Origin: Trichoplax adhaerens
Lineage: Eukaryota > Animalia > Placozoa
Direction: 5' to 3'
Length of the DNA stretch: 22,538 nt
Assembly (NCBI RefSeq): GCF_000150275.1
Contig: NW_002060982.1
Coordinates: 185,773 to 208,310 of the forward strand
Position numbers and translations under genes: made by a program. Below are positions 1,889 to 22,029 of the stretch, one piece after another (the first letter of the stretch is position 1; each line of letters opens with the position of its first letter). The notes below the pieces were generated by a model. It did no database searches. It worked only from the letters and a program-made list of their open reading frames with translations, and was not told the origin of the DNA.

Positions 1889-2230
1889 TATGGCGTAGCC
1901 TAGTTACGTAATAGTGTCCTGAAGTTTTTAATTACCATGTAACGCCTTGACGTATAACAATTTAAATTTTCGTGCGTGCCGCTTTGGTTAACTTAAATGA
2001 GATTGCTAGTGAGCGTGCTTAAAGCATGAATTCAGATTACGTTAGTGATCTAATTAGGAGCGATAAAACTAGATGTGACGTTAAGTACTACAGAGGCTAT
2101 GGTTGCAGATTGAAAACATGATTACAGATCAGTACTGATTATTAAATATTAAGTGAGCAAAAGAAATGCACGATTAATAAAAGTGTAGTATCAGTCTAAT
2201 CCGATACGTATATAATAAATTAAATGATTT

Positions 2231-2927: not shown

Positions 2928-3297
2928 CAATGTATCCATCGACATCAAGTAGTTATCTGACACTTTGACGTGCATACGAGTCGTATTGCAAGTTGACTCA
3001 ATTCAATCAGACAGTGAACTGCAGTAGTATAGAGTATTTCCCGAAGTCAAGTTTATAATTGGGTAAATATCAAGTTACAACTCAAATGTCACGTTAAGGT
3101 TTAACACGTTGGATTGTAAGAGCTATTATATATTTACTAGCTATGACAGCCTAAATCGATAGATCAATGTATACTTTTACACGTTACTGCGCTTAAGTCG
3201 CTGACACAACTGCATACAAGTACGCTAATGCTAGACTATCCAATATTCAAGTTAAAAGATACACTTCAAAACTAAACAAATACTACTACAGTAAAGT

Positions 3298-3620
3298 GTA
3301 CATCGAAGCACCATGACTTCTATTAATTTGTTATTACGCAGAAATTACGGACATAAGGCAAATGAATCATATTTTTAAATTACAATAGCTGTTTCTGCTT
3401 CTTAGTTAGCGGTTTTATACAATACTATGCCATTCTTGTTATAAAAAATCAAATGAAGTTAAATTTCGATCTATTTATACATCATGTAATACTTCAATAT
3501 TTCACGTCTAATGGCGATAAAACTACAACATAGAAAATATAGCCATTCTAGTTTATTGATTATTGTAAGCAAGCCAACAAGAAATTAAATTAGGACCATC
3601 GATAAATTAAAAATTTTAAA
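3298..3620. repeat. Third partial copy of the 52-375 segment, in the 3' flank of gene 1
   Basis: Shared ataaggcaaatgaatcatattttta, tttctgcttctta, tatacatcatgtaat and tggcgataaaact. Confidence 0.88.
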
Positions 3621-3969
3621 ATTTTTAGTATTTAATTGACATTTTTAATACTATAGTATAACGCTGTGTAAAACTGACAACCATCTATAAAATTAAGAAT
3701 GTTAATCCAAATTACTATTAGTTTGCTGGGAAGTTTAAAGTTTACTTGTAAAATCATCGTAAGCTGAAAAGTAACTAAGCTTGTATTGTATTCCCTGTTT
3801 TTGAAGGGTTATCTGTTAGGATAGTTAAATTAATTTAGAAGAGTAATTTAAGAAGGTAAAGGCATTCTATAATAATTTTGTCTTGGCGCATATTTTATAA
3901 GTTCAATTTAAATGTACGATAAATTATAAGCTGTATTGAAGATGGCTTTGAGGATAGGCTGTTTGCACT

Positions 3970-4232
3970 CTAGAAATTTTGTTCGTTGTTCTTTGACAGA
4001 ATGATGTCATTCCTACCAATAGTTTGCAAAGCCCGCTGCAATCGGCTAATGCTAACATTGGGATGTGCCTTTTTGTACCAGTAATTGAGCAATTCCATTG
4101 CCTGGTTAAAGACATGGTCGCGATTTTGTTCCATTATAACCTTAACACAAATCGTTGGATCTAGGATGGCCGCTAACTGTGGCCAGTCTGTGCCAATAGA
4201 GCTTGCAATAGGGTGAAAATACTTCCTAGGAT
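3970..4232 (-). CDS. Gene 1 terminal exon: death domain (DD-A1)
   Basis: Acceptor ttctacttgtactatatAG in phase 1. The translation DPRKYFHPIASSIGTDWPQLAAIL...QAMELLNYW...SISRLQRALQTIGRNDII matches the death-domain pattern (GxDWxxLA, LxxW, LxxAL...GRxDI). Confidence 0.85.
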
Positions 4233-7200
4233 CTATATAGTACAAGTAGAAACTTTACTATGAAGTACTATACGAGTATGTTGTAACAATTTCAATTGCA
4301 AATAAATTACTTGATTTTACATGATATAAAGTACAATATTTACATAATGAGCTCTTATGTCGCAATTAGAGTTGAATAATCATCTGGTTCGCTATAATTA
4401 TTTATGTAATGGTAATAATGGCATTAGCGATAGCACAGGTGGAACTGTACTTCTATTGTAAGACTAATAGAAATAAATGGCTCTAATTCGAATTTGAATA
4501 ACTCTGTAAACGAACTACTTACTGGACAAACAATGTACAAATAAATTAAGATTGAATATTTTTTAATTCATAAATCATTATTTATTATGTTCAGTAGCTT
4601 ACTAGTAGCAAGAATATTTTAATGACGATCTTAAAAATTCGTCAGTGATATCATTATCTAGTAAAACTGTATGCGATCATATCATCAGTGGCAAACGTAG
4701 CTTAAAGAATTACATCCATTGACGAGGTAAGGTATTCCTATGTTAGAATTTACACGAAGTAATTGCTCTTAATCATATTTGAATCGATCTACAATTGGAT
4801 TACTAAATGCAATTGAGAATGATTGATAGATATCAATTCAATAGAGGTTTACCTTCATCTTTGGTATCTGTCCATCGGTCTAAAGTAGTGGAATAAAAAT
4901 AGTAATAATCGATTAATAGTTCTATCGTTTAAGTAATCAATGCAGTAGATTAGTGCCCATAATTTTTGATAATAATCAACTATTGTTTACGCTATTACAA
5001 AATCACCTTATATTAAATAGTAAAATAGCTATGATACAGTACATTTATGTCTCTTTGCTTGCTCTATCGTATGAATTTAGTTTATGATATCATAAAAAGT
5101 GATAATATAAGAATGAAGCTGCTGTTTATTCTCACATGCTTACCTATCCAGAATTTTTCATTATAAATCATCCAATCGTTTAAAGATTGACTGGCAAATT
5201 CCATCTTACAATGCTTACATCGAATCCAATTTTGATCTCCTTCCTTGTATTCTTCAGTTATACTTGTTTGTGTATTACATTCACTACATTTGACGAAATA
5301 TCGACAATCGGCCCCTTTAAACTTAACCATCCTATCATTGACAGTGGAGATGAGTTTATTCTTGACAATTTCGTGAGGCCGTTTGACAAATATAGAATTT
5401 TTAACTTTATCGATAATCGATTGACTCCTCTTGAGCTCATTTATTTTCTGATAGCAATATTGTAAACCGATATGAGATTCCTCTTTCCTGACTACAAGAT
5501 AGTGATTGTCATTTGCTAAATAATATTTGGCACATTGATAGTATAATTCTACGTCCGTATTATTCCATTCCTTTAAACAGGAAGATAACAAGCAATAATA
5601 AATTCCATCTGGAAGATATGGAATATCTGTATGCTCGTATCCGATGTAGAGCCAATCTGATTGATGATATTTTGATAAATCGAATGGCTTAACATCATAT
5701 CGTAACAAGTATGGAACAAAGTATTGACATTCTTCGCCGTTGTCGTTCTTCTCATTTGTAATTGAACATAGAATATCATAAGCATGCATGAGTGCCAATA
5801 TAGTTTGCTTACTATTGTCATCTAAATTAAATTTATAAATAGCATGATCAATGTATGATCTTGATAATTTTCCTGTTTGGCTTGCTATATCATAGTCACG
5901 TTTTATTTGTGCACTTCCTTGTACAAAATCTTGTAATTGAATAATGGAACGAAATATACTTAACAACCAATCGACATTAGTTATAATAATTCCGTCGTCG
6001 CCTACTTTATCACAGTAGATGACTTCTCCTAAATCGTGTAGATACATTAGCATAGCGATTAATTCATCACGGTTTTCATATAATCCGTATTGTTGAGACA
6101 AGGTTACTATTTGTTGCATTGTCATAATATTATGCACTTGAGAATGTCTAATTTGATTCATAATAGAAGATGCGGGTTGATTGTTAGTAGGGAGCGATTT
6201 ATTTAATATTGTAGCCATGATATACCATCGAATAGGTATAGGATTCGTAATAAATGGCAGTGATTGTACAAATGCCTTAATGATACCATGTAAACGAAGA
6301 CAACATTGTTGACGCAGCTTCTGTGTCGATGGAGTACTATCAAGAGGATTGCAATCAAAAATAACACCAGAAGAATAGATATGACTGGCATAAGAAGGCA
6401 TGCGAGACGTCAATGTAGACACAAATTGATTGAATCGAGTTCGTCCATCTTTTTCATTGGTGATACAATCGCCATGAGAAGCTACTAAAATAATAATAGG
6501 TAATGAATGCTGTGAAGGTGGTAAATGCTGTTCATCTTCACTTTTAATGTTGACATTGATGGTACTTTGGCTTGTATGGCCAGCTATGATTGATGTAAGC
6601 CATTCTTGCATAGCTTGTAAATACGTCGTTTTGAGTAATTTGTTCTTCCTTGTTCTTACCTTGTCGTTAATGTCTTGCTTAATATTAAATACTAAAATAT
6701 AAATACTATTGACGGAGATAAAGGGATAATGAGTAACATGATAGACGGCATGACCTGCGAAATCCCATATTTTAACATACTGATTTTTATCATCTTTGTC
6801 TGCATTTTGACTTTCCATGGACGAACAGTAATATTGATGTAAGCCTCGTTTAGACTGTGATTCTATTGGAATCTCTGTCCTTGCTATCGCTGCATCTTGC
6901 GTAATGACATTAGTTGCAGAAGAATCGACACTGTGTTGTTGCCAATTTGACACAGGTGGATTATTGGCTATAACGGGTTGATCTATTGGATCCATGTCGG
7001 TTACTTGCTGGCTGATGTTATCTTGACTATCGATACTTGGCTGGGCTAAGTCTTGTATGACTGTCTTGACTTTATCGTCCAGTATTTCAGTCCAATCACA
7101 ACCCTCTAAGTTCATAATATTATAATATTCAGTGTCTACCATAATATCCAAACTCTCAGCCACTTGCGTCGGAGATGGACTGTTGAGTGGTTGCTTGGTA

Positions 7201-9025
7201 AATATTTTTCGAAGAGAAGTTTTGCCCACATTGCGAGGGCCAATGAACATGCCTCGTATTAAATGATTAAAGCAATGACCATGTTTTAAGCCTTTGCTAT
7301 ATGCATTGTAATATTTCTTTTCTTGCAAAGCTGTAGAATAACAAAATGCAGAATAGGGTTACGGTTATCCATCGCTCTCTCGTCTACTACTGTATTAAAA
7401 CTTCACTTACCTTTCTGTTGTATGTGTTGATTGTTCTGACTGCCGTCGATAGTATTTGCTGGCGCTGTAACGTTGTTGGTTTGATTCGGTTGAAACAGTT
7501 CAACGGTACTCTTGATGAAATTTCTCGCTGTTGATGTCGTCGATTTCTGCTTGCGGAGAGTGATTTCGATATTCTTTTTGGTCCTTGTAACTAGGCCATC
7601 ATTTCTGCTTAAGGCTGCGATCTGGAGTGACTTGTTAAAGTTATCCACAGCCTGATCGTACTTGCCTTGGCGCTCATAGATAACTCCTATGCTGTTATAT
7701 GACCGCGCAACATCAGGATGATTATGACCAAGGACTGACAATCGAATTTGCAGTGACTTGTCATGCATATCCACAGCCTGATCGTACTTGCCTTGGCGAT
7801 GATAGACAAGTCCCATGTTGTGATATGACCACGCAACATCAGGATGATTGTGACCAAGGACTGACAATCGAATTTGCAGTGACGTGTCATACATCTCCAC
7901 AGCCTGATCGTACTTGCCTTGGTGATGATAGACAACTCCTATGCTGTTATATGAGTTGGCAACATCAGGATGATTGTGACCAACGACTGACAATCCAATT
8001 TGCAGTGACTTGTCATACATCTCCACAGCCTGATCGTACTTGCCTTGGTGACGATAGACAACTCCTATGCTACCAAATGACCACGCAACATCGGGATGAT
8101 TGTGACCAAGGACTGACAATCGAATTTGCAGTGACTTGTCATACATATCCACAGCCTGATCGTACTTGCCTTGGTCATCATAGACAACTCCCATGTTGTG
8201 ATATGAGTTGGCAACATCGGGATGATTGTGACCAAGGACTGACAATCCAATTTGCAGTGACTTGTCATGCATATCCACAGCCAGATCGTACTTGCACAAG
8301 CGATCATAGACAACTCCTATGTTGTTATATAAACTGGCAACATCAGGATGATTGTGACCAAGGACTGACAGTCTAATTTGTAGTGACATGTTATACATAT
8401 CCACAGCCTGATCGTACTTGCCTAGGCGAATAAAGACATTGCCTATGATGTTATATGAGTTGGCAACATCGGGATGATTGTGGCCAAAGACTGACAATCG
8501 AATTTGCAGCGACTTGTCCGACATAGTCCGACAGAAGTCAAGCTTGCACAAGTCGAAGTAGACGCGCCCAATTTGATAATAACTATCGGCAAGACGAGTA
8601 TCCTTTTCGTCTAACCATTTTAATTTCATTTCCAACGATTTCTTAACGTCTTCCAGTGCTCCGATGTAATCCCCTTGGCGTCTCTTAATCTCACTTTCTC
8701 TTTGTAAACATTGAGCCGTGCTCACTTCATCTTGCAGTTTAGTAGCCACAGTTTGTCCCTTTTCACTCCATTCAACAGCTTCCTTGAATTGATATTGTAA
8801 AGTGTAAATGTCGCAAAGACCAAGATAAATATCGCATGCAAGTCGATCAATATCCGCACTAGGATTCGACAACGAAGCAATCTCATCGACAGCTTGTGTA
8901 TAACAAGATAGTCCGTCCACCAACTGGAAGGCAGTCTTGAATGAGTTGCCCTTGTCGTACAGTGATTGTATACGGGTATAGTGCGGAAGCACACTCGTGG
9001 AACGGACAGATTCATCATCAGCCAT
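3970..9025 (-). CDS. Gene 1: spliced TPR-Roc-COR-death domain (ROCO family) protein, join(complement 9025..7411, 7330..5144, 4879..4853, 4232..3970), about 1363 aa
   Basis: Exon lengths 1615+2187+27+263 = 4092 nt give 1364 codons with no internal stop. All three introns are GT-AG and phase 1. Domain motifs are listed under the individual exons. The ATG at 9025 follows an acceptor-like actaac...tgcag at 9032-9033, so upstream (probably UTR) exons may exist. Confidence 0.85.
4594..4788. repeat. Intronic block duplicated at 14741-14934 (about 90% identical) and more weakly at about 19509-19660
   Basis: Shared strings gtagcttactagtagc, aaaactgtatgcgatcatatcatcagtggcaaacgtagct, tattcctatgttagaattta and agtaattgctcttaatcatattt. 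Confidence 0.92.
4853..4879 (-). CDS. Gene 1 27-nt linker microexon, (D)RWTDTKDE
   Basis: ttccactactttAG|27 nt|GTAAAC, phase 1-1 and open. A positionally equivalent 27-nt exon with homologous flanks exists in gene 2. Confidence 0.7.
5144..7330 (-). CDS. Gene 1 exon: Roc GTPase plus COR domain with C-terminal CxxC..CxxC motif
   Basis: P-loop GPRNVGKT (7218-7241), switch-I Thr (SPTQ), G3 WDFAG (6753-6767) followed by VYHVTH, G4-like IILVASHGD. COR signatures PIPIRW, LMYLHDLGEVIY, VDWL, YFVPYLL and LPDGIY; then CSEC and CKHC. Ends at donor ATAG|GTAAGC (5144/5143). Confidence 0.92.
7331..7410 (-). other. 80-bp phase-1 intron joining the TPR exon to the Roc-COR exon
   Basis: Minus strand reads GTAAGT...ttgttattctacAG. 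Splicing gives G+CT = Ala, then LQEKKYY in frame with ORF 5082..7328. Confidence 0.9.
7411..9025 (-). CDS. Gene 1 exon: N-terminal TPR region (degenerate TPRs followed by about 7 conserved 42-aa kinesin-light-chain-type TPR repeats)
   Basis: ORF 7403..9037 contains the repeated unit HPDVAxSYxxIGVVYxxQGKYDQAVDMYDKSLQIRLSVLGHN. It ends at the canonical donor AAAG|GTAAGT (7411/7410); the ORF stop at 7403-7405 is intronic. Confidence 0.92.
7619..8519 (-). repeat. Coding tandem array of 126-bp (42-aa) TPR units, about 7 copies with high internal DNA identity
   Basis: The anchor (a/g)ggatgatt recurs at 7715, 7841, 7967, 8093, 8219, 8345 and 8471, an exact period of 126. Confidence 0.97.
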
Positions 9026-12000
9026 CTTTTCCTGCACTCAATTCAATAGTATGTTAGTTAAAGACTAGAACGACAGGTTAGAGACAAATAAGATTCAAAT
9101 CAAGCTTCGTCGCAACCATTAATTACTAATCATCGGATCGATATTATCTCTATGCATTAATGAGGGTATGTCGGAATGATTGTACTTGCGTGCCAGTCGT
9201 AGTTCAACAGAACAACATTAATTATTCCATTATACACAATTTTCAAGCATCAAAAAATCAACTTCTACAATGTCGCCTATTAATTCCGCATGGAAGATTA
9301 TCCGAAAATCAATCTCTGTAGATGATTACTGAAGGCAACGCTATCGGACAATCGTGTGCTTACGTGTACATTAACAAAATGCATTCCAGCTTACAAATAG
9401 ATTATACTCATAATCATAATAACCATCAAACAACAATCTTTTTATTCTAATAGACAACAGCAAATAAATGCTAGCCACATCAATGATAGTGTAAAATAAG
9501 AAAGGATGCTTGCAATATAGTTTCGTTGGCGTCGTTTACCTATCTTTAATTTCTATTTTTACTTGAAATACAATGTATAATGATGGATACCTAACGGAAT
9601 AGGTTACTTACCAATGGATGTTTTAAAAATCGGCTAATAACAACTTGATGATTTTGCTGTAACGTAGATTTAATCCTACCAATCCGACTGCGCGCTGCTT
9701 ATTGCAACAGGAGCTAATGGATAAAAAGAGAACGACAGGTGACATAAAACTCTACTCGGCTAAACAGCTCTATCCAACTGCATATACGCTAAATACACGC
9801 ACTGATCAGCACATCTAAATACTACAGTGTATCAGCGATTACAGACTACTAACTCATTGGTTATTTCCTAACTATAAAAACTCCTTGCAAAGTCCTGCAC
9901 GAGGAAGGGCACTATTGATAACCATGAAGCTTGCTTGCTAGAAATCCCAGTTAAACCTGCGGCTATGACACGCTTTTATTCGTAAGTAGTCCCTATGTGG
10001 ATGATGCGATAGCCGACGGATAAAGGTAAATAAATAAAATGAAGGTAAGGTAAATAAATAAATTAGGTTTCTTTGCAATGACTTGTGCATAGGCATAAGA
10101 CCTTATGAAATTAAAACAGCTCTTGTAGTGATGCACCCTATATTTGCTTGTAGCGATAGCTATATTTGATTGTGTTGTGTACTATATTTAGAATAGTTAA
10201 GTTTCTAAAAATAGATATTCTTGTGCTGCTAGATTTAGGTGACTGGTAACTACTATATTAGAAAGTGTTATTCACTAATATAGCTGTTAACTAATTATGG
10301 TACAGGACGTTATACGACTTGAAATACTAAGATTGTAAAGATGCCCAATACCTTACGGTGTTGGACATTAATGGTAAAGTAATAATATTGTAAGCAGTTT
10401 GATTAATACTGTAAAATGTAGTGATGATTCATGTCTGATTGTAGACGATGTTATTGCCTTAAATAGATTCAGAGAAAAGTATATAAGGTGTACAAATCTG
10501 AGCGTAAAGGTGGAGAAAAGATTTGATATCTAATTGAGCTCAGATTACTTTAGACTAGATTCTTGTGAGTAATTAATTATTGCTGTACTATTCTTTAGAA
10601 CCTTGTAATAAAAAGCTTTTATAGTACTGGATTCCTCTGTGGACTAAAATTACTGTGGAAACGATATTACAGCTCTAATTTGTATTAGTTTATTAAATAC
10701 GAGTTTAAGATTAACCTACGAGTATCTTCCCTACCGAATTTCTTATATCTTGTTAGCTTAGTAAGCCGTCAATCATGTTATTTGCAAAAGTTTGATTCCA
10801 ATGAACTATTGCATGGGTAGATACAAGTTACCAACAAAATATCTTTCTCTCTAAGTAAGGATAGTTGACATATTATCCTTATCCATTTTCTTCTATTACA
10901 GTCTATCAATAAAGCTATCATTTTATCAACAATTTAATTGCAGTCTACCGTACGCTATTTATTGTCGTGGCTCCGCAGTCTGTGTTTATTGCAATTCAAT
11001 TTGATAATGAGCTTGTTACTGCCATATAAAAGTCTCAAATTATCAACTATGAAATTCATCAAGTAATAACTTAAAGGGGCTACTGTTCAGGATAGGTTAC
11101 TGATAGTAAACTGCGAGAAAGAATAGCGATGAATATTATATAACATAGAGACATAGAGAAATGATAGCAGTCTATTTCAATATGCTTCATTGACATTATT
11201 CGATCCATTGAATCTACTGTAGCTCAACAAAGAATGTCATAAATTTAATAAAAGATATTGCTTGTTACAAATATTATCATTTTGTATACAACGTTCGTAG
11301 TCCGATGATGAATCAATGATAAACATTTGCATGGTCAAATTGTAAGCCATGCTAATAAAGATTGTACAATCGCAATCATGAATTTTTTAGACTAACCAGA
11401 TACATCAACAGCGGATTACAACATTGGATATGCAATAAAACGGATTAATCACTTGACTAATCAGCAGTAGCATATTCTACTGTAATTGGCAACAGGCATC
11501 TAATGCTGGCATTGCATTACAACAAGGCACTATCCTCTAAGTACTTACGCTCGCTGCATTCTCGCGCCAAAGAAGCTTCTTAGTTAACAAGTTCAGCTTC
11601 GATCCATCCTCACAGAACTCATTCTCAAGGGTAGGTAATCATTTCTACGAGCATACCTCAACAGTTTTCAACAAACAAGAAGTATTTTATGATCGGAATA
11701 GAGTAAAGTAAGATCAAATTAAAATCTCGTGACAGGATTGGCGTGAGTACTGTTTGGCCTGATTGCAAATTGCATGCTATAGATTCAAGATGTAATCCTC
11801 CATACGTACTGGAAGTACTGCAATCCATAGCAATTCCATATGATTACTACCTTAATTAATTTTATTCAATAATTAAGAATCAATGAATTGTTAATATACA
11901 CCATTTAAAGAAAATTTTTAGTATACTTTTATAAACTGTTTGACAAATGACAGTAAAAAATCAACGGAATACAGTAGCGCACGATGAAGATGATATCAAG

Positions 12001-14109
12001 CGATTCAGCAAGATGGCTTAGTTATTGGCCTCATCATTGATGATGATCACCAATAAAACAGTGGCCAACAGTAATTTCTGTCATCGGAAGAACAATCTTC
12101 ATACTAATTCAAGGAGGCTAAAAGATGCAACATAAAAAGAATCATCTACGCTTACTTCTCGTATGCACTAATTTGCACTACTTTAACATAGATGCCGAAG
12201 GAACGCTAATGTTGGCTTCAGACGATAGAGCTAAAATGGACATGGTTGGTACTTTCATCAACTACATGGAGGAGAATTACCAAGTCTATGCTATATGTGC
12301 ATGCCTACAAATTATTTCTATTCAAAATAATATACCAATCTCAGCTCTAAAAATGCTGCACAGTGCAAAATGGAACAGAGAATTTGGAAAGTCTCCACGC
12401 TGCACTACGTTATTTTAAGTAAACTTACGTCTTAAAGCTTCTTAAACTGTTTCTACATGAAGTTGATACAAATGCAATAAGTTCAAAACCAATATTCAGT
12501 GATTAACTGGTAATATCAGAGTAATTTGCTCAACTCTGGTTAAAACAGGTCACGACATTTTAAAGGTGCACTAGCAGCACTACCATCTTGTATCAAGTAC
12601 TAACTCCTCTAAAATAATCAAGACAGGAGCATTCTCTTAGAAGCTGATATGCTATCGAAACTGCGATTTGATGCAGTACACTAATGCCTTCTAGCTTATA
12701 AACTGTCCGTTTACTGTACAAGACTAATCAATTTCTCAATGAGGAGTACTAGAGTATCGTCTCAAACTTGGTTAATAGCCACAAAGGTTGTAGCCGCTCC
12801 ATGAGCAGTGGCGCTCGACGATTACAGGAAAGGTGCCAATGGTGCAATTTTAAACGAACCATAGACGGATTCTACTTGATTTTATTCATTTGATCTTCCA
12901 TTTACTCAAATTATTCAAGAGTCTTTTGCTCGTTTTAGCTCATACTGTCTTGATGAAATGTCGTACAAATTGGCATGGACAAGCCTGGAGCGAGATAGAA
13001 AGATCAAATACAGTCGTTGCCATAAATGTGAAAATTTTGCCTTGCCAATGTTACAATTTTCCAGCCTAAGGCTATATTGTTTGGTTCAGCGATTTAGCTA
13101 TGGACCATTGACTATACAACTTATGCAAGGTATGTTCTATCGTAGTCATCAGGTGTTGTTACACAGACATAGTTTTGAACTATCTTCATTGGATTTCTTG
13201 AGTGGCTTATAACCAAGTAGAGAAATGATTGGTCGCAAGGATGTTGGATGAAAGCAAATTAGTAGTAACTTCGTGTTTTGTTCAAATAATGATTGGCTTA
13301 CTCCACAATGTTATAAAGGTCATTTAATCTATCTCTTGACAAGTACTGTTTTACTTAATTATTTTATAGTTTAACTCGATTACATCACCTTTGGCTGTAG
13401 GACTGAATGCATTTTTCCTTAGTTTACTACCGGTTACAGTGAGTCTCCTCATGTAAAAACAGTAAAGCAATTTGGTCTTAATTTCGTACTTCGTAGCAAT
13501 CATGACTAGAAGCTATTCACAGTCGATAACTGGCAATTAACTAGCTCTTCTTACGATTCATTATAGCAAAAGATTTCTTTATTGTCAGGATCTTTATAAC
13601 TTTCATAAAGTAGGTTAATTTTACCGTCTGAAACAACGTCACTTTGCATAAAATAGTACAGCATTAACAAGTTTAACTCACGATTAGTACAAGCAAAAAT
13701 GAATAGTAACCGTAATTAAGAAACCTTTAGAATACTTTACAATAATAAATGTTTATCCTTTACCAGCAATTTATATGTGCTCCATAAGTATTTAAAATAA
13801 ATTTATGATGCTTATAATGTTGTCATTTCGTTGTGCACAGGAATAAAATGTTAAAAACTTAATTTTTATATTAGCAGATTCTTACACAAAACGTGATTGT
13901 GATGGCGAAGCTAACAAATTGAAATTAATCACATTGAGCATTGCTAACATTGTCCATTAAATTGTTGGTTTATTTCAACCAAGGCAAAAAATAAAACATT
14001 ATTTTCTTATAACGCTAATTATTTTGATCATGAAAAAATGTAAATAAGCACAAATAGACTATCAATAAATTAGAATCTACACTATAGTAGACGAAAGAAG
14101 ATTAGTCCT

Positions 14110-14366
14110 CTAGGAATTTTGTTCGTTTGGGATAATAATATCATTTCTGTCAATCGTTTCCAAAGCGTTCCGCAATAGATTAAGGGTAGCATTTGGGTAT
14201 TTCCTTCTGTACCACTGATTAAGCGATTGGATGGCACTGTTATAGGTATGACCACGATGTTTTGCTTCGATAACCTCAGTATCAATCGTTGGATCTAGTA
14301 CTATAGCTAATTTTATCCAGTCTACACCAACACAACTAGCGATGGAGTGAAAATAGTTTCTAGGAT
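14110..14366 (-). CDS. Orphan or alternative terminal death-domain exon (DD-A2), paralogue of gene 1 DD; absent from the ORF track in this frame
   Basis: Acceptor gtgccttatAG, phase 1, open frame: DPRNYFHSIASCVGVDWIKLAIVLDPTIDTEVIEAKHRGHTYNSAIQSLNQWYRRKYPNATLNLLRNALETIDRNDIIIPNEQNS*. About 45 of 85 residues identical to DD-A1, with the same acceptor position and equivalent stop. Confidence 0.8.
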
Positions 14367-14740
14367 CTATAAGGCACGAATGAACATATTACCACATACG
14401 TCATCTTAAAATTACAAATTGAAATTATCTTATCATGGACTAGCCGAACCCGCATACCCAGCTGTGTGCTATCAATATGACTCAATAATTTAAATGTGGA
14501 TACATTTGTTTTAATTTAACCTAATTCATTTTACTTATTGTTGGATACTCGCAAGTAAAGTAGTGGAGTAGTAGTTTATATGTTCTAATTATAATCTGAA
14601 ATATTCGCTGGCATTCTAATTAGCTAACAGAACTTTGTGCGATAATATCATACATAATAATCACTTCTGGTCACTATTATGATTAAATGGGCAAATTAAT
14701 TACTATATCTATGAATAAAAACGTAAAAAAAAGCTTAAAA

Positions 14741-14934
14741 GTAGCTTACTAGTAGCTAAATATTCTAATGAAAATCTTAAAAATTCGTTGGTGATATCAT
14801 CATGTAGCAAAACTGTATGCGATCATATCATCAGTGGCAAACGTAGCTGAAAGTATTACATCAATTAACGAGGTAAGATATTCCTATGTTAGAATTTATA
14901 CGGAGTAATTGCTCTTAATCATATTTAAATCGAT
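14741..14934. repeat. Second copy of the gene 1 intronic block, upstream of DD-A2
   Basis: Aligns directly to 4594-4788 with about 18 differences in about 195 nt. Confidence 0.92.
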
Positions 14935-15640
14935 ATTATATCGTATAAATGTTGTAATTATCATGGTAAATATCTTATCGAAGATGATCAAGTTCAACAC
15001 AGGGGTTGGATATCAAATCAATTTCATTTATAGTTTGCGTATAGCTAGCTAGATAGGCTTTCCACCAAATCATAAGCAGTCTCGTTATCCAGACCCTATT
15101 GATAGGGTGATTGTATATCTTGAGGTATCATAGAATGATCGCATTGATCAGCTGTTATGTTTTGCTAACAGTAATAACAACGAATGGATGGAAAGGATAT
15201 ACAGGTTTGATAGTCTATAGCATCAACGCCAAGTCAGTCATTAATATCAAGGAAAACTATTGGAAAGAAAAAGTTAAAAATAATGATTTTATTCCTACTA
15301 GAAGATCGATTACTTACAATTATAGGCTAGTCGCTGTTCTGTTAGTGGAGTAAATTATACCAACTCAATATTACTAATAAATTTGCTGTATTTGTAGAAT
15401 AGTAATCACTAAGTTATCAAGATTTCTCATCAACTAGATCCTTTAAATATAGACTACATCATTTGTTATATTTGCTGGTAATAATAATATGATAAAATGA
15501 GTAAGACTACAGTCAACTTGATGGATTGAATTTTTTGTTAACTTTATTTATCATCGATTCCTAATTTTGTTCAAGCTGTATTACACATTCTAATGTCTGC
15601 AACTGTATGCTGCAATGCCCATCTTTGCTATCCAAATTAC

Positions 15641-15694
15641 CTTGATTTTGAAAAGCATGGTTGATGCTCTCCTTGATACGATACATTCTGTATC
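15641..15694 (-). CDS. Candidate 54-nt symmetric exon (GYRMYRIKESINHAFQNQ in phase 1) between DD-B and DD-A2
   Basis: gcctttgtAG|54 nt|GTAATT with AAG before the donor; open frame. No homology support. Confidence 0.25.
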
Positions 15695-16659
15695 CTACAA
15701 AGGCATCATTTTTTTGTTTTGCTACTATGATCCACATAGACCTTTATTCAGTTATGACTTGTAAATTGATGGTGACGACCATGGACGTCAAAACAAGTCC
15801 TTGCATTTGCATTGTAAGATTAAAGAGAACATAGCAGCTAAAATGGTATTGCAAAAGTTAGCAAAAATATCTCATTCATGGTATTAGGTTATAAGAGCAT
15901 TTCCACACAAAATGGTTACAGTCAATGAAGCGAAATTCCTTGAAATAAGGAAGCAGAAATAGAAGCAAACACTATCACCTTTTAAGTAGTAATCAATAAA
16001 GACATTGGAAATCAGGCGTAACTTATATCTAAAACATTTCTACAATATCGTAGAGTGAACCGAGAAATAATGCACCTTCAATATTTTTAATTTAAGTGGG
16101 GCACTAAACGGCTACTTTCTGTCGTTCACTTTTACGAGTCTGGTGCAGAATACTTTTTTTGATTTTAATATGCTGCAATATGTTAACGCTAACCATAACA
16201 AAATTGTGCCAGATAAAGGAGGGTCGTCATACAAGATGCACTATCCGCTAGCAGTCGAATACTGACAATTCAGCAAAGTGTAAATATGTCAAAATTGTCC
16301 AGGCTATATCTCAGTCTTCATCATAATCACGCAGTCACTTATGGAATCAGATGTTGTAGACTATCAACTTCGTTAAAAAATTACGGCAATGGTTAACACG
16401 TTGTCCGCAATCATAGTTAAGTGTAAATTAAATAAAGTATAAACCAAACGCATGTGAGGCGCGACTTTACTTTATTGTGAATTGTTGCGAGACTAGGGAT
16501 CTCAACATGCCCTACTAGTAAAAAGTCTTGATTTTTATTATTTAATTAGCTCATACTGCTGAACTCACACGCTAGCTACTGCCACAATTGGTTATCATAA
16601 CTTATACATTAGTTCCATGGCTTCAACTCTTAATCAAGACTATTTAATTAATCTTTGCT

Positions 16660-16980
16660 AACTTTAGTCTTTAGGAAATGGCGTGAAGCCAGTATAGTAA
16701 ATTCAAAATCAGATGGTAAGGTCAACTAGTATTAATGGATGTGAAAATCGTGCCTTGCTAACTACCTCTAACATACAGTATAAGTTTGATATCTTGTTAA
16801 TATTAGTAGTTCCGTGGATTCAATTTCTGATCAAAACTGCTAGCTAATCTTGGCTAACATAGTTGTCAGGAAAATTTAGTGAAGTCGGTATACCAAGTTA
16901 GAAGGAAGATGGAAAGATTAACTAGTTTGAATGGATATGAAAATCCTGCCTTGAATGCGATCTTTAACTTACGGCATTGC
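16660..16980. repeat. Diverged direct repeat with a period of about 196 bp
   Basis: gtgaagccagtata...aactagtattaatggatgtgaaaatcgtgccttg (16683-16757) versus gtgaagtcggtata...aactagtttgaatggatatgaaaatcctgccttg (16879-16953). Confidence 0.75.
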
Positions 16981-18830
16981 CTTAGCGATATTGTAAGAGT
17001 ATTGATCTACATTGTTTTCTTTTGACAACAATTATCCCTGCACAAAGAGTAAATCTTTAAAAAGAAATAATCACTCTAATAGCACATTTATTCTTAGCCT
17101 TTGAATGACTTTTATATACCCTTTGAAACTTTTAATTTGAATTATTTTTTCTTATAACTAATCAGTACTTCCACTGAAGATTAATTTCAAAGTATGGCGT
17201 AGTTTTAGTTTACTTGCCAATCGGATAGAAAAGGTTATTTTTATCATTTTACACCATCCAGTACTTATATTTTCTAGCTTGACTACTCGAGCATTTGATA
17301 AAGGGTTTACTACATTTTTAACCTCAATAGAGTACAATAATGAGTTATAAGAGCTCAATTGAGCAATTATAGGCTCAGAAATTAAGTCTCTTGATTTACG
17401 ATAATTGCTTATAATTTTATTTTTATTTAAGTAATTTTATTATGTTGCTTTTGATGATAATATGACAGAATACGAGAAGTACTTTTTTCGATAATAAAAG
17501 TTAGTCACAGATATTGCAACCAAACTTAGCTAACTAATGCTATTGGTAATAAACAATGAAATCTTTATATTGCTTTTATCAAAGTTAGGAACGGCAGTAA
17601 CATAATTAATACCGGTGCTACAATTCAGAATAGTAATATCACTAGAAGTAAAATAGAGTAGATAAGATTTTTTAAATTTACGGTACGTTTATACTTCAAA
17701 ATAAGCGATCTTGTATGCATAACTTAACGCTATCAATAATAACATAATTATCTTCCAACTACCGCAAGCGCGTTTGTCTAATGGCTTAAAACTGAATTTA
17801 AAGCCGAAATGATTCTCTTAATCTATTCGCATGCATTATAAATTACGGGTATACTGTAATATCGTCCTAATGTACAATGGCAACTATCGATTTTAAGCCA
17901 CCGAAATTTCCATATTAAAAATTAGTTAGTGCTATCTATATATGCGCTTATGGTGATTTCAGTAAGCTACAGTAGTAGCAAGTTGACTGAGTCATTGCGA
18001 TAGCTTCTGCCTCATATGGTTATTGACAGGTATCCTTGGTTAGGTTGTTTGTGATAATTTATTAAAAAATTTACCTTAGCAATGGATCAACTCTATTAAC
18101 AGCTATGATTTTGCTATAGCTACAACTAATTTCTGTTTATCTGCATATTGAATAATGATTTAATCTTTCCTTTATTAAAATTATAAATGGCTACACTACT
18201 GCGTAGTTATAGAAAATCATAATTCTTAGTTTTTTGTTTTAAGTTTAATCCTTTACTCAATTTTTTGGCAATTAACGTTACATTATTGGCAGCTATAGAG
18301 AGCAAATAATAAATTGTTGCTGTTCATTATATTTATTAGTGTATAATAATTGATCCACTATAGAGCCTTTTACAACGTTAAATTACACAACAGAGGACTT
18401 CAGATGCAACAGTAAAAACTACTTGAGCCAGCAGTAAAAGCTAGAGGGATAATCATTCACAATGAAACGAAAGTACCTACGGCAATAAACTACTGCAAAA
18501 CTAGATTACGGTAAAGCGTTTCTAAGTAAAAAATATAAACATAAATATTACTAGATTTTGAATATCTTGATAAAAGTTTATTTACTACTGTCACGACCGA
18601 GGTTATGAAGCTTAGAGATGATATAAAATTGGAATACTGTACGTTCGTTGATCCAGTATAACTACCGTACCTCATAAATTAACATTGACTAGAATTGCTC
18701 TTGAAATATTAGTCTCTGTGCTGATATATATCTTAAGAATTACGATTTGTCTAGTTCAAATACTATGGAAGAAATTTATAAAATTAACCATAACATGACC
18801 ATTAGCAGATATGATATTTATCTCTAGTAT

Positions 18831-19096
18831 TCATTCGGTCATTTTTTTTTCGACTTCGTCAGCTAAAGCATTTATTTCCATCTTACGTAAAGCTTCAACC
18901 ACTGCAGAGATTTTAGCATTCATCCCAGCTTTATCTTTCCACGATTTTAAAACATTGTGCACTTTATCGTAACGTCCTTCATCCTGACTTGATTTAATTT
19001 CATTAATCTTTGTGTCCGTTAACTTTAATAACACTCCAAAACGAACTATATGGGTTCCATTTAGTTTTGCTGCTATTAAATCGAAGCATGCTCTCT
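18831..19096 (-). CDS. Gene 2 terminal exon: divergent death domain (DD-B)
   Basis: Acceptor tcctttgcttttacatgaaaatAG in phase 1. Translation ERACFDLIAAKLNGTHIVRFGVLLKLTDTKINEIK...KVHNVLKSWKDKAGMNAKISAVVEALRKMEINALADEV shows the six-helix DD pattern (LxxW, AxxxxLxxAL, LADxV). Confidence 0.82.
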
Positions 19097-19671
19097 CTAT
19101 TTTCATGTAAAAGCAAAGGAAAAATTCATGAAAAAAAATTGGCAATATTAGCATCGTTTCAAGTCTTCAGCAATGTATCTAATCTAGAACGCAGGCCTAA
19201 GAATGATATTCAGCAATTTTCCTTCACAATAACTGTAAATTTATTCTCATGATTGTAATATGCAATCTAATGTTAATATTAAATGCTATTATTGATTCTC
19301 AGTCACCATATTTTGCTGATTCAATTTCATAATAGTTATGAATACTTATTAAAGCTTGCCGGACGAGCTCTTTTAAAATTAAATTAAATCGAATAGTAAT
19401 TTATCAATGACTGTTTACTATATTGAGTGATTTTGGTAGTTAATATACCATATTGTAATTACAATCTTAAAATGTTCATTTTGCAATATCATAAGCTAGC
19501 AAAATTTTATGCGATCACATAATCAGCGACAAAATCGACAAAAATATTATATCCATTTAAAGCAGGATCTGTTGTAATATTTGCTCTCATTCGTACTTAT
19601 ATCAGTCTATAAATTAATTGCATTATGCATTTTTGAAATGACTGCTAGATATCAATTCAGTGGAGGCTCAC

Positions 19672-19698
19672 CCTTATCTTCCGCATATATCTTTTTCT
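19672..19698 (-). CDS. Gene 2 27-nt linker microexon, (E)KKIYAEDK
   Basis: ctcatttctttAG|27 nt|GTGAGC, phase 1-1. Flanks are homologous to those of 4853-4879 (gatatcaattca..., taataatc...ctatc). Confidence 0.72.
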
Positions 19699-20261
19699 CT
19701 AAAGAAATGAGGTGAAAATAGGAATAATCAATTAGTAGCTCTATCATAATATTTTAAAACAGATGATAGAGTCGTAGGCATGCAAGTGAAATGTATGACA
19801 TGTTTCTCTAAAGAATTTACGATGATAGTTTCCTCCCTTTATCATTTTAGGTGCTTTTACAAGCAGGGAATGCTATCTATGTTAATTTCTATACGCTGCA
19901 TAAAACGATGAAACTAATTGGCTATTAAACAGTTCAATATTGATGACTTATCATGCACTAACGTTAAAAAACAAAATACTATAGGGAAGAGCGATAAATA
20001 AAATCCAGCCGTTTCTATTTACTCCACAAATGAAATGCAGTAGATGAAGTACTCATTTGAAATATTACAATCCATAATACATTTTCAGTAATAAGAAATA
20101 TATTAAAATCAGAAAATATTATTGCAATTAAATAGTAAAATAGCTATGATAGAGTACATTTATATCTCTCGTTGCTTGCTCTATGCGTATGACTTTCGTT
20201 TATTATATCATAAAAAGTGATAATATAAGAATGAAGCTGCTGTTTATTCTCACATGCTTAC

Positions 20262-21480
20262 CTATCCAGAATTTTTCATTATAAATCACCCAATCGTTTA
20301 AAGATTGACTGGCAAATTCCATCTTACAATGCTTACATCGAATCCAATTTTGATCTCCTTCCTTGTATTCTTCAGTTATACTTGTTTGTGTATTACATTC
20401 ACTACATTTGACGAAATATCGACAATCAGCCCCTTTAAACTTAACCATCCTATCATTGACAGTGGAGATGAGTTTATTCTTGACAATTTCGTGTGGCCGT
20501 TTGACAAATATAGAATTTTTAACTTTATCGATAATCGATTGACTCCTCTTGAGCTCATTTATTTCCTGATAGCAATATTGTAAACCGATGTGAGATTCCT
20601 CTTTCCTGACTACAAGATAGTGATTGTCATTTGCTAAATAATATTTGGCACATTGATAGTATAATTCTACGTCCGTATTATTCCATTCCTTTAAACATGA
20701 AGATAACAAGCAATAATAAATTCCATCTGGAAGATATGGAATATCTGTATGCTCGTATCCGATGTAGAGCCAATCTGATTGATGATATTTTGATAAATCG
20801 AATGGCTTAACATCATATCGTAACAAATATGGAACAAAGTATTGACATTCTTCGCCGTTGTCGTTCTTCTCATTTGTAATTGAACATAGAATATCATAAG
20901 CATGCATGAGTGCCAATATAGTTTGCTTACTATTGTCATCTAAATTAAATTTATAAATAGCATGATCAATGTATGATCTTGATAATTTTCCTGTTTGGCT
21001 GGCTATATCATAGTCACGTTTTATCTGTGCACTTCCTTGTACAAAATCTTGTAATTGAATAATAGAACGAAATATACTTAATAACCAATCGACATTAGTT
21101 ATAATAATTCCGTCGTCGCCTACTTTATCACAGTAGATGACTTCTCCTAAATCGTGTAGATACATTAGCATAGCGATTAATTCATCATGGTTTTCATATA
21201 ATCCGTATTGTTGAGACAAGGTTACTACTTGTTGCATTGTCATAATATTATGCACTTGAGAATGTCTAATTTGATTCATAATAGAAGATGCGGGTTGATT
21301 GTTAGTAGGGAGCGATTTATTTAATATTGTAGCCATGATATACCATCGAATAGGTATAGGATTCGTAATAAATGGCAGTGATTGTACAAATGCCTTAATG
21401 ATACCATGTAAACGAAGACAACATTGTTGACGCAGCTTCTGTGTCGACGGAGTACTATCAAGAGGATTTGCAATCAAAAA
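20262..21480 (-). CDS. Gene 2 partial Roc-COR exon (COR portion), 5' part lost in the assembly gap
   Basis: Near-identical to 5144-6361 at offset 15118: four amino-acid changes (I>V, R>H, K>E, M>V) and about ten silent changes. Same donor ATAG|GTAAGC at 20262/20261. Confidence 0.9.
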
Positions 21481-21530
21481 NNNNNNNNNNNNNNNNNNNN
21501 NNNNNNNNNNNNNNNNNNNNNNNNNNNNNN
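21481..21530. other. Assembly gap (50 N)
   Basis: Run of N. The sequence beyond it does not continue the homology with gene 1. Confidence 0.99.
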
Positions 21531-22029
21531 TATCGATATAACTATAGCGACATTTTGCATTACAAATAGCATCCAATAAACTGTGCAGAACATTCGGTCT
21601 TCGCTATGACACGTCTTAACTTGTTAGATGCTTGTATAGTATCACATCAGTATATTAATGATATAATCCTTATAGATAAACAAGCTTAAAAAGTATTTGG
21701 TATTAATCTGTTTTTACATTACATAATTATGAAGACTCTTAGCATTTGTAGTAAGCTTAGTAAGCTATCAGTAATTGATACTTGTTGAAACTTTATCGTA
21801 CTAAAACAAAACTTAATGCAATACTGTAAGATAACTACATCAATTTTTACGTAAAGTAATACACGGATTGATTTCATACGGAGTATAGTAGAAATGCTAT
21901 TTAGTTATTATAACTTAAGATCGAATTTATAACTTATAAAATGCTACCATAAAAGCATAACCTAAATTTTGATAAATTGCTGCTCCAACTGAACTATAAA
22001 CGAGATCAAACCAATCACTCTATGCTTAC

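What the first reader, a model, noticed from the sequence alone, without database searches (positions are those of the whole stretch)
3970..21480. Clustered TPR-Roc-COR-death domain receptors: a candidate NLR-analogous immune system built on a ROCO GTPase switch
Seen: the ORF track's separate TPR, Roc-COR and DD ORFs splice into one in-frame protein of about 1363 aa, and a second paralogue lies 15118 bp away in the same orientation. Established: NLR/STAND receptors combine a repeat sensor, a nucleotide-binding switch and a death-fold effector; DAPK1 ends in ankyrin-Roc-COR-DD; some prokaryotic Roco proteins are LRR-Roc-COR-TIR. Inference: this kinase-less TPR-Roc-COR-DD is a tripartite sensor-switch-effector receptor with NLR logic in reversed order. 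Its variable sensor, tandem clustering and divergent effectors fit non-self recognition. Expanded ROCO families with TPR or death-fold domains may already be catalogued in basal animals (from memory, needs a literature check), so the likely novelty is the diversification mechanism and the function rather than the domain list.
Basis: partly seen in the sequence, partly recalled or inferred. Interest (0 to 1): 0.85.

Follow-up and report, generated by a model that had tools for sequence, protein, structure and literature searches.

The report
Tandem placozoan TPR-Roco-Death genes, swapped tails
Two neighbouring Trichoplax genes encode kinase-less TPR-Roc-COR-Death GTPase proteins from an already catalogued placozoan gene expansion; the genes are real, an immune role is still untested, and the new detail is that their nearly identical GTPase cores carry unrelated death-domain exons.

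Summary
The window is Trichoplax adhaerens scaffold DNA. Gene 1 is as described: four minus-strand exons, GT-AG introns that are all phase 1, 4089 nt giving 1363 aa (TPR, Roc, COR, zinc ribbon, Death). All three junctions appear in public RNA-type contigs.

The "second paralogue" is only a COR-Death 3' half here, because a 50-N assembly gap cuts it at 21481. The 99%-identical Trichoplax sp. H2 contig has a 1299-aa TPR-Roc-COR-Death model at that position, although its TPR exon is frameshifted.

The fold matches LRRK1, LRRK2 and bacterial Roco RocCOR, and the G1, G3 and G4 motifs are conserved. The genome holds about 45-50 Roc-COR exons.

New here: the two genes share a 1.35-kb tract at 98.3% identity that ends abruptly 132 nt into intron 2. 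Their Death domains are 21% identical; one is ankyrin-like, the other FADD-like. COR and Death trees conflict (AU p = 1e-93).

Civiero 2014 already listed at least 17 Trichoplax ROCO genes with TPR and death domains. The idea of Roc as an NLR-like switch is also published. Function is untested. This scan reported the same family on other DNA of this genome.

The parts
7411..9025 (-). Gene 1 exon 1: ATG at 9025, an N-terminal helical region and the TPR array. It ends in phase 1.
   Evidence: Pfam TPR_12 2.4e-141 and TPR_10 8.3e-84. The H2 orthologue P0002 residues 1-539 are 99.4% identical. The donor reads AAAG|GTAAGT.
7628..8509 (-). Seven near-identical 42-aa (126-nt) TPR units. Variation is concentrated at unit positions 17, 20, 21, 24, 27 and 28.
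   Evidence: Self-similarity of 82-87% nt at 126-nt offsets. Per-position counts over all 42 positions give pS 0.145 and pN 0.131.
7331..7410 (-). Intron 1 (80 nt, GT-AG, phase 1).
   Evidence: A contig in run X8 skips 7330->7411 with CT..AC ends on the + strand. The H2 model P0002 uses the same junction.
5144..7330 (-). Gene 1 exon 2 (2187 nt, phase 1 at both ends): Roc, COR-A, COR-B-like region and zinc ribbon in one exon.
   Evidence: Pfam Roc and COR-A above cut-off. AlphaFold2 model with pLDDT 78 and pTM 0.81. Foldseek top hits are LRRK1, LRRK2 and C. tepidum Roco RocCOR at E 1e-14 to 1e-12.
6468..7241 (-). Roc G domain motifs: G1 GPRNVGKT (7241-7218), G3 DFAG (6764-6753), G4 SHGD (6479-6468). 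An insert of about 100 aa lies between G1 and G3, predicted disordered over about 7034-6864.
   Evidence: The motifs are conserved in the family copies whose Roc region is intact, except L007. G1-G3 spacing is 136-198 aa. pLDDT is below 50 at residues 99-155.
5703..6164 (-). COR-A domain.
   Evidence: Pfam PF16095 at 1.4e-10. The same place was found in the whole-genome search.
5208..5288 (-). CxxC...CxxC zinc-ribbon-like motif at the end of exon 2.
   Evidence: C681 and C684 are invariant, and C704 and C707 are at least 90% conserved, in 30 family sequences.
4853..4879 (-). Gene 1 micro-exon (27 nt, 9 codons, phase 1 at both ends).
   Evidence: The 4879/5144 joint is seen in 2 contigs of RNA run X15, and a loose end at 4853 reads into exon 4. 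Gene 2 has an equivalent 27-nt exon.
3970..4232 (-). Gene 1 last exon: Death domain DD1 (ankyrin-like) and the stop codon at 3972-3970.
   Evidence: Pfam Death 5.6e-10. The closest solved Death domain is ankyrin-1, E 8.1e-5.
5012..6361 (-). Near-identical tract shared with gene 2 (partner at 20127-21480). Its 3' edge lies 132 nt inside intron 2.
   Evidence: 98.3% over 1354 nt with 19 substitutions. Identity falls to 50-70% beyond 5012.
20262..21480 (-). Gene 2: the COR part of its large exon, cut at its 5' side by the assembly gap.
   Evidence: COR-A 7.9e-11. 99% aa identity to gene 1 residues 327-728. This is JGI model TRIADDRAFT_62367, P0030.
21481..21530 (.). A run of 50 N (scaffold gap) that hides the 5' part of gene 2.
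19672..19698 (-). Gene 2 micro-exon (27 nt, encoding EKKIYAEDK together with the flanking split codons).
   Evidence: Matches P0029, P0030 and P0008. GT-AG context.
18831..19096 (-). Gene 2 last exon: Death domain DD2 (FADD-like) and the stop codon.
   Evidence: Pfam Death 1.2e-10. The closest solved Death domain is FADD, E 3.4e-6. It is 21% identical to DD1.
14110..14366 (-). Orphan Death-domain exon of the DD1 type between the two genes. The frame, the acceptor (TTATAG|AT) and the stop are intact, but no Roc-COR exon lies upstream of it.
   Evidence: 69% nt and 42% aa identity to the gene 1 Death exon. Pfam Death hit in the genome scan at C1375:199906-200127. Sequence context.
14740..15127 (-). 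Relics next to the orphan exon: a copy of gene 1 intron 3 (14740-14934, 91%) and a decayed piece resembling the N-terminal exon (14978-15127).

Best explanation
These are two tandem members of a placozoan-specific expansion of kinase-less ROCO proteins. Each functional module sits on its own phase-1 exon: the TPR array, then Roc-COR with a zinc ribbon, then a 9-codon linker, then a Death domain.

Shown: both genes are real and gene 1 is spliced as proposed. The core has the Roc-COR fold with intact nucleotide-binding motifs. The family evolves by birth and death. Gene conversion or very recent duplication keeps the Roc-COR core of neighbours nearly identical. TPR units and whole Death-domain exons are exchanged.

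Inferred: the TPR array binds a ligand or guards a partner. This changes the nucleotide state and the COR-mediated oligomeric state of the switch. That in turn brings Death domains together to nucleate a death-domain signalling complex. Gene 1 would feed an ankyrin/UNC5-type partner and gene 2 a FADD-type partner. The likely pathway is cell death, stress or innate immunity. This is the sensor-switch-effector logic of NLRs, in the usual ROCO domain order.
For: Gene structure and splicing.

Organism and orthologues.

ROCO identity: Pfam Roc and COR-A above cut-off. G1 GPxxVGK[ST], G3 DFxG[HQ] and G4 [ST]H[GA]D are conserved in the family copies whose Roc region is intact. The AlphaFold2 model matches LRRK1, LRRK2 and CtRoco RocCOR at E 1e-14 to 1e-12.

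Expansion and clustering: 49 COR-A hits, 118 Death hits and 70 Roc-COR matches, many with stops.

Mosaic history:
- Paralogue identity is 92-96% in the 5' flank and N-terminus, 82-89% in the TPR units with whole-unit indels, and 98.3% in the COR tract between the two genes of this window. It is 100% over window 5200-6399 against H2 gene 2. It breaks abruptly at 5012.
- DD1 and DD2 are 21% identical and resemble different Death-domain subtypes.
- The Death-domain data reject the COR clades, AU p = 1e-93 and 0.005.
- All introns are phase 1.

Partner domains of the nearest non-placozoan Roc-COR proteins are apoptosis or immunity modules: Bcl-2 with caspase, Death with TIR, and ANK with Death.

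Published concept: Kaur 2021 (PMC8195603), Civiero 2014 (PMC4104024) and Teng 2024 (PMC11378527).
Against: No functional datum exists. There is no expression change on challenge, no ligand, no GTPase assay and no Death-domain partner.

The TPR_12 type of repeat also occurs in kinesin light chain and NPHP3, which are not immune proteins.

The elevated non-synonymous variation in the TPR units was measured at positions chosen because they vary. It could also reflect relaxed constraint.

The homodimer prediction for COR gave no verdict.

Several family copies are broken, so part of the family may be decaying.

The RNA-type contigs differ from the window by 1-5% and may come from a sister lineage or a near-identical paralogue.

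Both assemblies break in this repeat. Some of the 98-100% identities could therefore be affected by haplotigs or collapsed repeats.
Confidence: 0.55

Rival explanations
1. They are DAPK1-like intrinsic cell-death or stress regulators rather than receptors for non-self. The TPR array would tether endogenous partners. The Roc-COR-Death part would work as in DAPK1 but without a kinase. The expansion would reflect subfunctionalisation among cell types.
For: The Roc-COR-Death order is that of DAPK1, and a hemichordate ANK-Roc-COR-Death relative exists. The Death domains resemble ankyrin-type and FADD-type domains. Purifying selection acts on the N-terminal region, dN/dS 0.37.
Against: About 45-50 copies with many pseudogene fragments, near-identical neighbours, tail swapping and repeat-unit turnover are unusual for housekeeping death regulators. 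No one-to-one orthologue outside Placozoa appeared among the best hits.
Confidence: 0.2
2. They are trafficking or cytoskeletal scaffolds. Kinesin-light-chain-type TPRs would bind cargo. Roc-COR would act as in LRRK1/2 on membranes or microtubules. The Death domain would be a generic interaction module.
For: The TPR_12, TPR_10 and NPHP3-type repeats led the H2 annotation to name these proteins 'kinesin light chain' or 'nephrocystin-3'. The best structural matches are LRRK1 and LRRK2. Civiero 2014 speculates about chemotaxis and phagocytosis.
Against: There is no kinase or other catalytic output. The names come from the repeats alone. Relatives in other invertebrates carry caspase, TIR, CARD and Death partners rather than trafficking domains. 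Turnover is rapid.
Confidence: 0.1
3. Much of what is seen is recently duplicated, partly decaying DNA plus assembly noise. Gene 2 and the orphan Death exon would be non-functional remnants, and the near-identity would reflect haplotigs or collapsed repeats.
For: There is a gap at 21481-21530. Both H2 contigs end inside the repeat. Contig C1239 is unplaced. The TPR exon of H2 gene 2 has a +1 frameshift that the gene model skips. Many family fragments contain stops. A 3.2-kb copy of the gene 1 tail sits alone on scaffold C1404.
Against: Gene 1 is intact over 1363 codons and is spliced in RNA-type contigs. The 3' exons of gene 2 are intact, and independent H1 and H2 gene models agree on them. 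The two tails are not allelic; they are 21% identical and flanked by different sequence.
Confidence: 0.1

Closest known systems
Placozoan ROCO expansion catalogued by Civiero et al. 2014 (PMC4104024, Figure 1)
   Same: Same organism and same family: Roc-COR flanked by TPR or LRR repeats and CARD or death domains. Gene 2 is the JGI model TRIADDRAFT_62367.
   Different: That list has at least 17 genes and was built from fragmentary gene models. Here the genome shows about 45-50 Roc-COR exons. No T. adhaerens protein matching gene 1 appeared in the one protein search run. The earlier list does not describe exon phases, the zinc ribbon, the Roc insert, core homogenisation or Death-exon swapping.
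DAPK1 (kinase, CaM-binding region, ankyrin repeats, Roc-COR, Death domain)
   Same: Repeats N-terminal to Roc-COR and a C-terminal Death domain. Roc acts as the intramolecular switch.
   Different: There is no kinase or calmodulin region. TPR replaces ankyrin. A zinc ribbon and a 9-codon linker exon are added, and Roc carries an insert of about 100 aa. The family is multi-copy and lineage-specific rather than a conserved single orthologue.
Prokaryotic LRR-Roc-COR-effector ('AP-GTPase') conflict systems (Kaur et al. 2021, PMC8195603) and brown-algal LRR-ROCO candidate receptors (Zambounis 2012, cited in PMC4104024; Teng 2024, PMC11378527)
   Same: The same order of variable repeats, then Roc-COR, then a variable C-terminal module. 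The families are clustered and diversifying. Exon or cassette shuffling is proposed as the source of diversity.
   Different: The sensor here is TPR rather than LRR, and the effector is a non-catalytic Death adaptor. In brown algae the shuffled exons are the repeats. Here whole tail exons are also exchanged.
NLR/STAND receptors, including placozoan NB-ARC/NACHT-TPR/WD40 genes (Kamm et al. 2019, PMC6321704)
   Same: Tripartite logic of repeat sensor, nucleotide switch and death-fold module, with lineage-specific expansion. From memory, fungal NLRs also have highly similar internal repeats with hypervariable positions.
   Different: The switch is a Ras-like GTPase with COR, not a STAND ATPase. 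The domain order is reversed. The expected assembly is a COR dimer rather than a wheel. Kamm et al. do not mention Roc or ROCO proteins.
Invertebrate Roc-COR proteins with death-machinery partners found here: Owenia Bcl-2-Roc-COR-caspase, Branchiostoma Neuralized-Roc-COR-Death-TIR, Glandiceps ANK-Roc-COR-Death, and mollusc or sponge Roc-COR-Death/CARD clusters
   Same: A Roc-COR core at 24-29% identity, joined to apoptosis or immunity modules.
   Different: The sensors and effectors differ. None of those examined has the TPR_12 array together with the zinc ribbon.

Membership tests
ROCO (Roc-COR GTPases) | Ras-like Roc G domain with nucleotide-binding motifs | tested here: met
   Pfam Roc scores 46.2 bits against a cut-off of 27. 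G1 GPRNVGKT, G3 DFAG and G4 SHGD are conserved in the family copies whose Roc region is intact, except L007.
ROCO (Roc-COR GTPases) | COR domain (COR-A and COR-B) directly after Roc in the same polypeptide | tested here: met
   COR-A scores 41.7 bits against a cut-off of 35.3. The Pfam COR-B model was not hit. The predicted structure nevertheless aligns over about 740 columns with C. tepidum RocCOR (3dpu, 6hlu), with LRRK1 and LRRK2, and with the isolated COR domain 3dpt.
ROCO (Roc-COR GTPases) | GTP binding and hydrolysis, and nucleotide-dependent COR dimerisation | tested here: inconclusive
   Biochemistry cannot be tested with these tools. The homodimer prediction for COR residues 327-728 returned no verdict.
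NLR / STAND receptors | Central STAND NTPase (NACHT or NB-ARC) | tested here: not met
   None of the gene's exons hits NACHT or NB-ARC. The only NTPase is Roc, and the fold matches Roc-COR proteins.
NLR / STAND receptors | Repeat sensor plus death-fold module in one protein | tested here: met
   TPR array and Death domain are both present, but in the reverse order with respect to the switch.
DAPK1 orthologue | N-terminal Ser/Thr kinase with calmodulin-binding segment and ankyrin repeats | tested here: not met
   Exon 1 contains only TPR-type matches and there is no kinase hit. The ATG at 9025 agrees with H2 model P0002.
Death domain superfamily (Death subfamily) | Six-helix Death domain recognised by PF00531 | tested here: met
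   DD1 scores 39.7 bits and DD2 41.8 bits against a cut-off of 22.6. Weak sequence matches to the solved ankyrin-1 and FADD Death domains.

The most novel reading that the evidence does not exclude
Placozoans have no LRR-containing NLRs. In them, the roughly 45-50 ROCO genes would form the main diversifying intracellular receptor repertoire. Phase-1 single-exon modules would let TPR sensors and Death or CARD tails be recombined freely. Gene conversion would keep the GTPase switch uniform. This would be a GTPase-based counterpart of NLR immunity or allorecognition, with built-in rewiring of effectors.
Probability: 0.25. Interest if true: 0.75.

Novelty: new member of a known kind. Interest (0 to 1): 0.42.

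Why it matters
If these proteins are receptors, placozoans would show that an animal can build a large intracellular surveillance repertoire on a Ras-like GTPase switch instead of a STAND ATPase. That would link DAPK1, LRRK-type proteins and bacterial Roco conflict systems to innate immunity. This locus offers a clean natural experiment: two almost identical switches joined to different sensors and to different classes of Death domain. That is a convenient starting point for testing how ROCO switches couple to death-domain signalling. As it stands, the finding refines a published gene family and corrects its annotation. It does not establish a new system.

Tried and rejected
1. The reading that gene 2 is a genuinely truncated COR-Death gene is rejected. 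The break is a 50-N gap, and the H2 orthologous contig has a full-length model.

2. I looked for the missing Roc and TPR exons of gene 2 in the 10 kb upstream. None were found, but that stretch holds two long N runs.

3. The COR homodimer prediction gave no verdict, with a score of 0.00 in both runs. It is not evidence either way.

4. A sequence search of the Roc-COR exon against solved structures gave only weak hits to the Roc segment, E 1e-4 to 9e-3. The fold search was needed to see COR.

The tree work therefore rests on 20 loci that were chosen because they have a Death exon downstream. That choice biases any architecture count.

6. dN/dS for the TPR array between the two genes failed, because the H2 gene 2 TPR exon has a +1 frameshift and repeat indels.

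7. tRNA search: none found. Pfam on two intergenic ORFs: nothing.

8. The joined (spliced) protein was not sent to any search or folding tool. All searches were run exon by exon by reference. Frame continuity was checked by arithmetic and by a short in-script translation only.


Full report
**Origin of the window.** The window is G000:C1375:185773-208310 of a 105.6-Mb genome in 1414 contigs. The translated ORFs find their best relatives in Trichoplax sp. H2 (90-96% identity) and T. adhaerens. Gene 2 here is the T. adhaerens model TRIADDRAFT_62367, which sits on a contig of the same length as this scaffold, 284,262 bp. The DNA is AT-rich, 27-44% GC.

**Gene 1.** Pfam places three sets of domains on the minus strand:
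- TPR_12 and TPR_10 repeats in ORF 7403-9037.
- Roc and COR-A in ORF 5082-7328.
- Death in ORF 3970-4245.

Exons 9025-7411, 7330-5144, 4879-4853 and 4232-3973 are 1615, 2187, 27 and 260 nt long. Together they give 4089 nt, or 1363 codons, followed by a stop at 3972-3970. All three introns are phase 1. The Roc-COR exon and the 27-nt micro-exon are therefore symmetric 1-1 modules, and the Death exon starts in phase 1. That is the arrangement that permits in-frame exon exchange.

Public contigs laid on 3900-9100 show three things:
- The 7330/7411 joint appears in run X8, one contig.
- The 4879/5144 joint appears in run X15, two contigs. X15 is on record as RNA.
- In X15, a loose end at 4853 reads the first 13 nt of exon 4, and a loose end at 4234 reads back into the micro-exon.

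Caveats apply. These are Logan contigs, not reads. Some differ from the window by 1-5%, so they may come from a sister lineage or a near-identical paralogue. Unspliced contigs are present as well. The H2 model P0002 uses the same first intron, 99.4% identity over exon 1. No T. adhaerens protein matching gene 1 appeared in the one protein search that was run.

**The switch.** The family keeps G1 GPxxVGK[ST], G3 DFxG[HQ] and G4 [ST]H[GA]D in the copies whose Roc region is intact. L007 is degenerate in these motifs. All members have 136-198 residues between G1 and G3. In the AlphaFold2 model, residues 99-155 are low-confidence (mean pLDDT 78, pTM 0.81). I recall the usual G1-G3 spacing in Ras-like domains as about 45 residues, so this is an insert of roughly 100 aa. 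Foldseek ranks LRRK1, LRRK2 and the Chlorobium tepidum Roco RocCOR first, E 1e-14 to 1e-12 with about 740 aligned columns. The isolated COR domain 3dpt is also hit. Four cysteines (C681, C684, C704, C707) form a conserved CxxC...CxxC motif at the end of the exon. ROCO membership is therefore met on sequence and predicted fold. Biochemistry is untested, and the COR homodimer prediction gave no verdict.

**Gene 2.** The block 20127-21480 is 98.3% identical to 5012-6361, with 19 substitutions, same orientation and an offset of about 15118. It is followed by its own 27-nt micro-exon at 19698-19672 and a Death exon at 19096-18831. The homology stops at 21480 because 21481-21530 is a run of 50 N. 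The ORF listing entry 20203-21576 simply reads through that run.

No Roc or TPR exon is found in the next 10 kb upstream, but that stretch has long N runs. The H2 contig NOWV01000293.1 is collinear with window 19583-5801 at about 99%. It carries a P450 gene, a short TPR gene and then P0029. P0029 is a 1299-aa model with TPR, Roc, COR-A and Death, and it ends at the position that corresponds to window 18831. About 9.2 kb downstream is P0002, the gene 1 orthologue, which is cut by the contig end. A second H2 contig also ends inside this repeat.

In this genome the unplaced contig C1239 holds an intact 709-aa Roc-COR frame. The fetched part of it (L031) is 99.65% identical to H2 gene 2. It is probably the missing part of gene 2 or its other allele. 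The tandem pair is therefore real, but this window shows only the 3' half of the second gene. One caution remains. In H2 the TPR exon of gene 2 has a +1 frameshift after residue 211, which the gene model skips with an intron. This is either a sequencing error or a disabled copy.

**Mosaic history.** Window gene 1 was aligned to H2 gene 2:

| Region | nt identity |
|---|---|
| 5' flank and N-terminal region | 92-96% |
| TPR units | 82-89%, with whole-unit indels |
| Roc | 92-98% |
| COR, window 5200-6399 | 100% (none of the 402 COR codons differs) |
| Beyond 5012, 132 nt into intron 2 | 50-70% |

Because intron sequence is included in the near-identical tract, the identity reflects gene conversion or very recent duplication, not selection on the protein. 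The N-terminal region gives dS 0.10 and dN 0.038. Roc gives pS 0.046 and pN 0.031.

DD1 and DD2 are 21% identical. DD1 is nearest to ankyrin-type Death domains, E 8e-5. DD2 is nearest to FADD, E 3e-6. The gene 1 tail and its downstream flank (window 2192-5426) recur at 97.6% on scaffold C1404. There it is attached to unrelated sequence.

**Family-wide pattern.** The genome has 49 COR-A hits, 118 Death hits and 70 Roc-COR protein matches, or about 45-50 loci. Many are fragments with stop codons, and many lie in clusters. I fetched 20 loci that have a Death exon downstream of COR.
- 13 have a TPR exon upstream.
- Four are TPR-Death-Roc-COR-Death.
- At least two are Death-Roc-COR-Death.
- Four have a broken Roc-COR exon.

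Pairwise COR identity barely predicts Death identity (r = 0.26). L016/L017 are 99.5% versus 67% identical, and L008/L025 are 78% versus 19%. In the COR tree, gene 1, gene 2 and L019 form a starred clade. In the Death tree, gene 1 groups with L011, L012 and L020, while gene 2 groups with L013 and L019 across the deepest split. The Death data reject the COR clades, AU p = 1e-93 and 0.005. The groups were taken from the COR tree, but I had already seen the Death tree. Death-exon exchange is therefore recurrent in the family.

**TPR array.** There are seven 42-aa units. The positions with three or more residues are 8, 17, 20, 21, 24, 27, 28, 39 and 41. At those positions dN is 0.52 against dS 0.13, but they were selected for being variable. 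Over all 42 positions pN is 0.131 and pS is 0.145. This is suggestive of diversification but is not proof.

**Comparison with the literature.** Civiero et al. 2014 (PMC4104024) report at least 17 T. adhaerens ROCO genes flanked by TPR, LRR, CARD, death and AAA domains. They speculate about chemotaxis and phagocytosis. Teng et al. 2024 repeat this and propose brown-algal ROCOs as immune receptors. Kaur et al. 2021 describe the Roc 'AP-GTPase' replacing STAND NTPases in prokaryotic conflict systems, with N-terminal LRRs and variable C-terminal effectors. The placozoan immunity survey of Kamm et al. 2019 does not mention Roc or ROCO proteins.

A full HMMER scan finds 835 relatives. About 50 clusters score below E = 1e-30, and all of those I looked up were placozoan. 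More distant relatives occur in annelid, hemichordate, amphioxus and echinoderm genomes, with Bcl-2 and caspase, ANK and Death, Death and TIR, or kinase and ZU5 partners. The protein atlas adds mollusc and sponge clusters with Roc-COR plus Death or CARD.

The domain list and the NLR analogy are therefore not new. What this window adds is a corrected gene structure, the gap explanation for gene 2, phase-1 modularity, core homogenisation and tail swapping.

**Earlier notes of this scan.** After my own analysis I looked up the scan's notes. Several other windows of this genome were reported with the same family. One follow-up (s1-734983) also concluded that tail exons and gene body have separate histories.

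**Verdict.** I classify this as a new member of a known kind, of moderate interest.

Noticed in passing
window 14110-15127 (minus strand): An intact orphan Death exon of the DD1 type. It has a good acceptor and a stop. Beside it lie a 91% copy of gene 1 intron 3 and a decayed fragment resembling the N-terminal exon. It looks like the remnant of a third family gene with its middle deleted. Use as an alternative last exon of gene 2 was not tested.
   Followed up: partly
L027 (G000:C1404:926526-931252) versus window 2192-5426: A 3.2-kb copy at 97.6% of the gene 1 COR tail, micro-exon, Death exon and downstream flank lies on another scaffold. It abuts sequence that is 99.9% identical to a different H2 contig (L003). 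This is a recent segmental copy of a tail module.
   Followed up: partly
L005:10001-10640 (H2 contig NOWV01000293.1): The continuous frame of H2 gene 2 stops after 211 aa because of one extra base in a TPR unit. The annotated 1299-aa model P0029 avoids this with an intron inside the repeat array.
   Followed up: partly
window 5145-6350 versus L005 (H2 gene 2): None of the 402 COR codons differs between gene 1 of this genome and gene 2 of the sister lineage. Orthologous flanks differ by about 1%, and the two genes of this window differ at 19 sites. This could be concerted evolution, shared haplotypes between lineages, or assembly cross-talk.
   Followed up: partly
window 7788-8546: One contig of run X1 joins 7788 to 8546, skipping 757 nt (about six 126-nt TPR units). 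This is either repeat-number variation or an assembly collapse.
   Followed up: no
window 4233-4343: One contig of run X8 skips 111 nt directly upstream of the Death exon, with CT..AC ends, and then continues through intron 3. This is either an alternative splice form or an indel in that strain.
   Followed up: no
L002 (10 kb before the window start), about 4.0-4.5 kb and 8.2-8.7 kb upstream of window base 1: Two copies, 4.26 kb apart, of sequence resembling the 5' flank and N-terminal exon of the TPR-ROCO genes (46-64% aa, 73% nt). TPR-unit matches lie just beyond the farther copy. No Roc-COR match to gene 1 was found in L002.
   Followed up: no
L007 (G000:C1396:1056200-1065600): This family member has degenerate G1 (GKN) and G3 (WEFGS) motifs and a very long branch. 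It is possibly a GTPase-dead copy.
   Followed up: no
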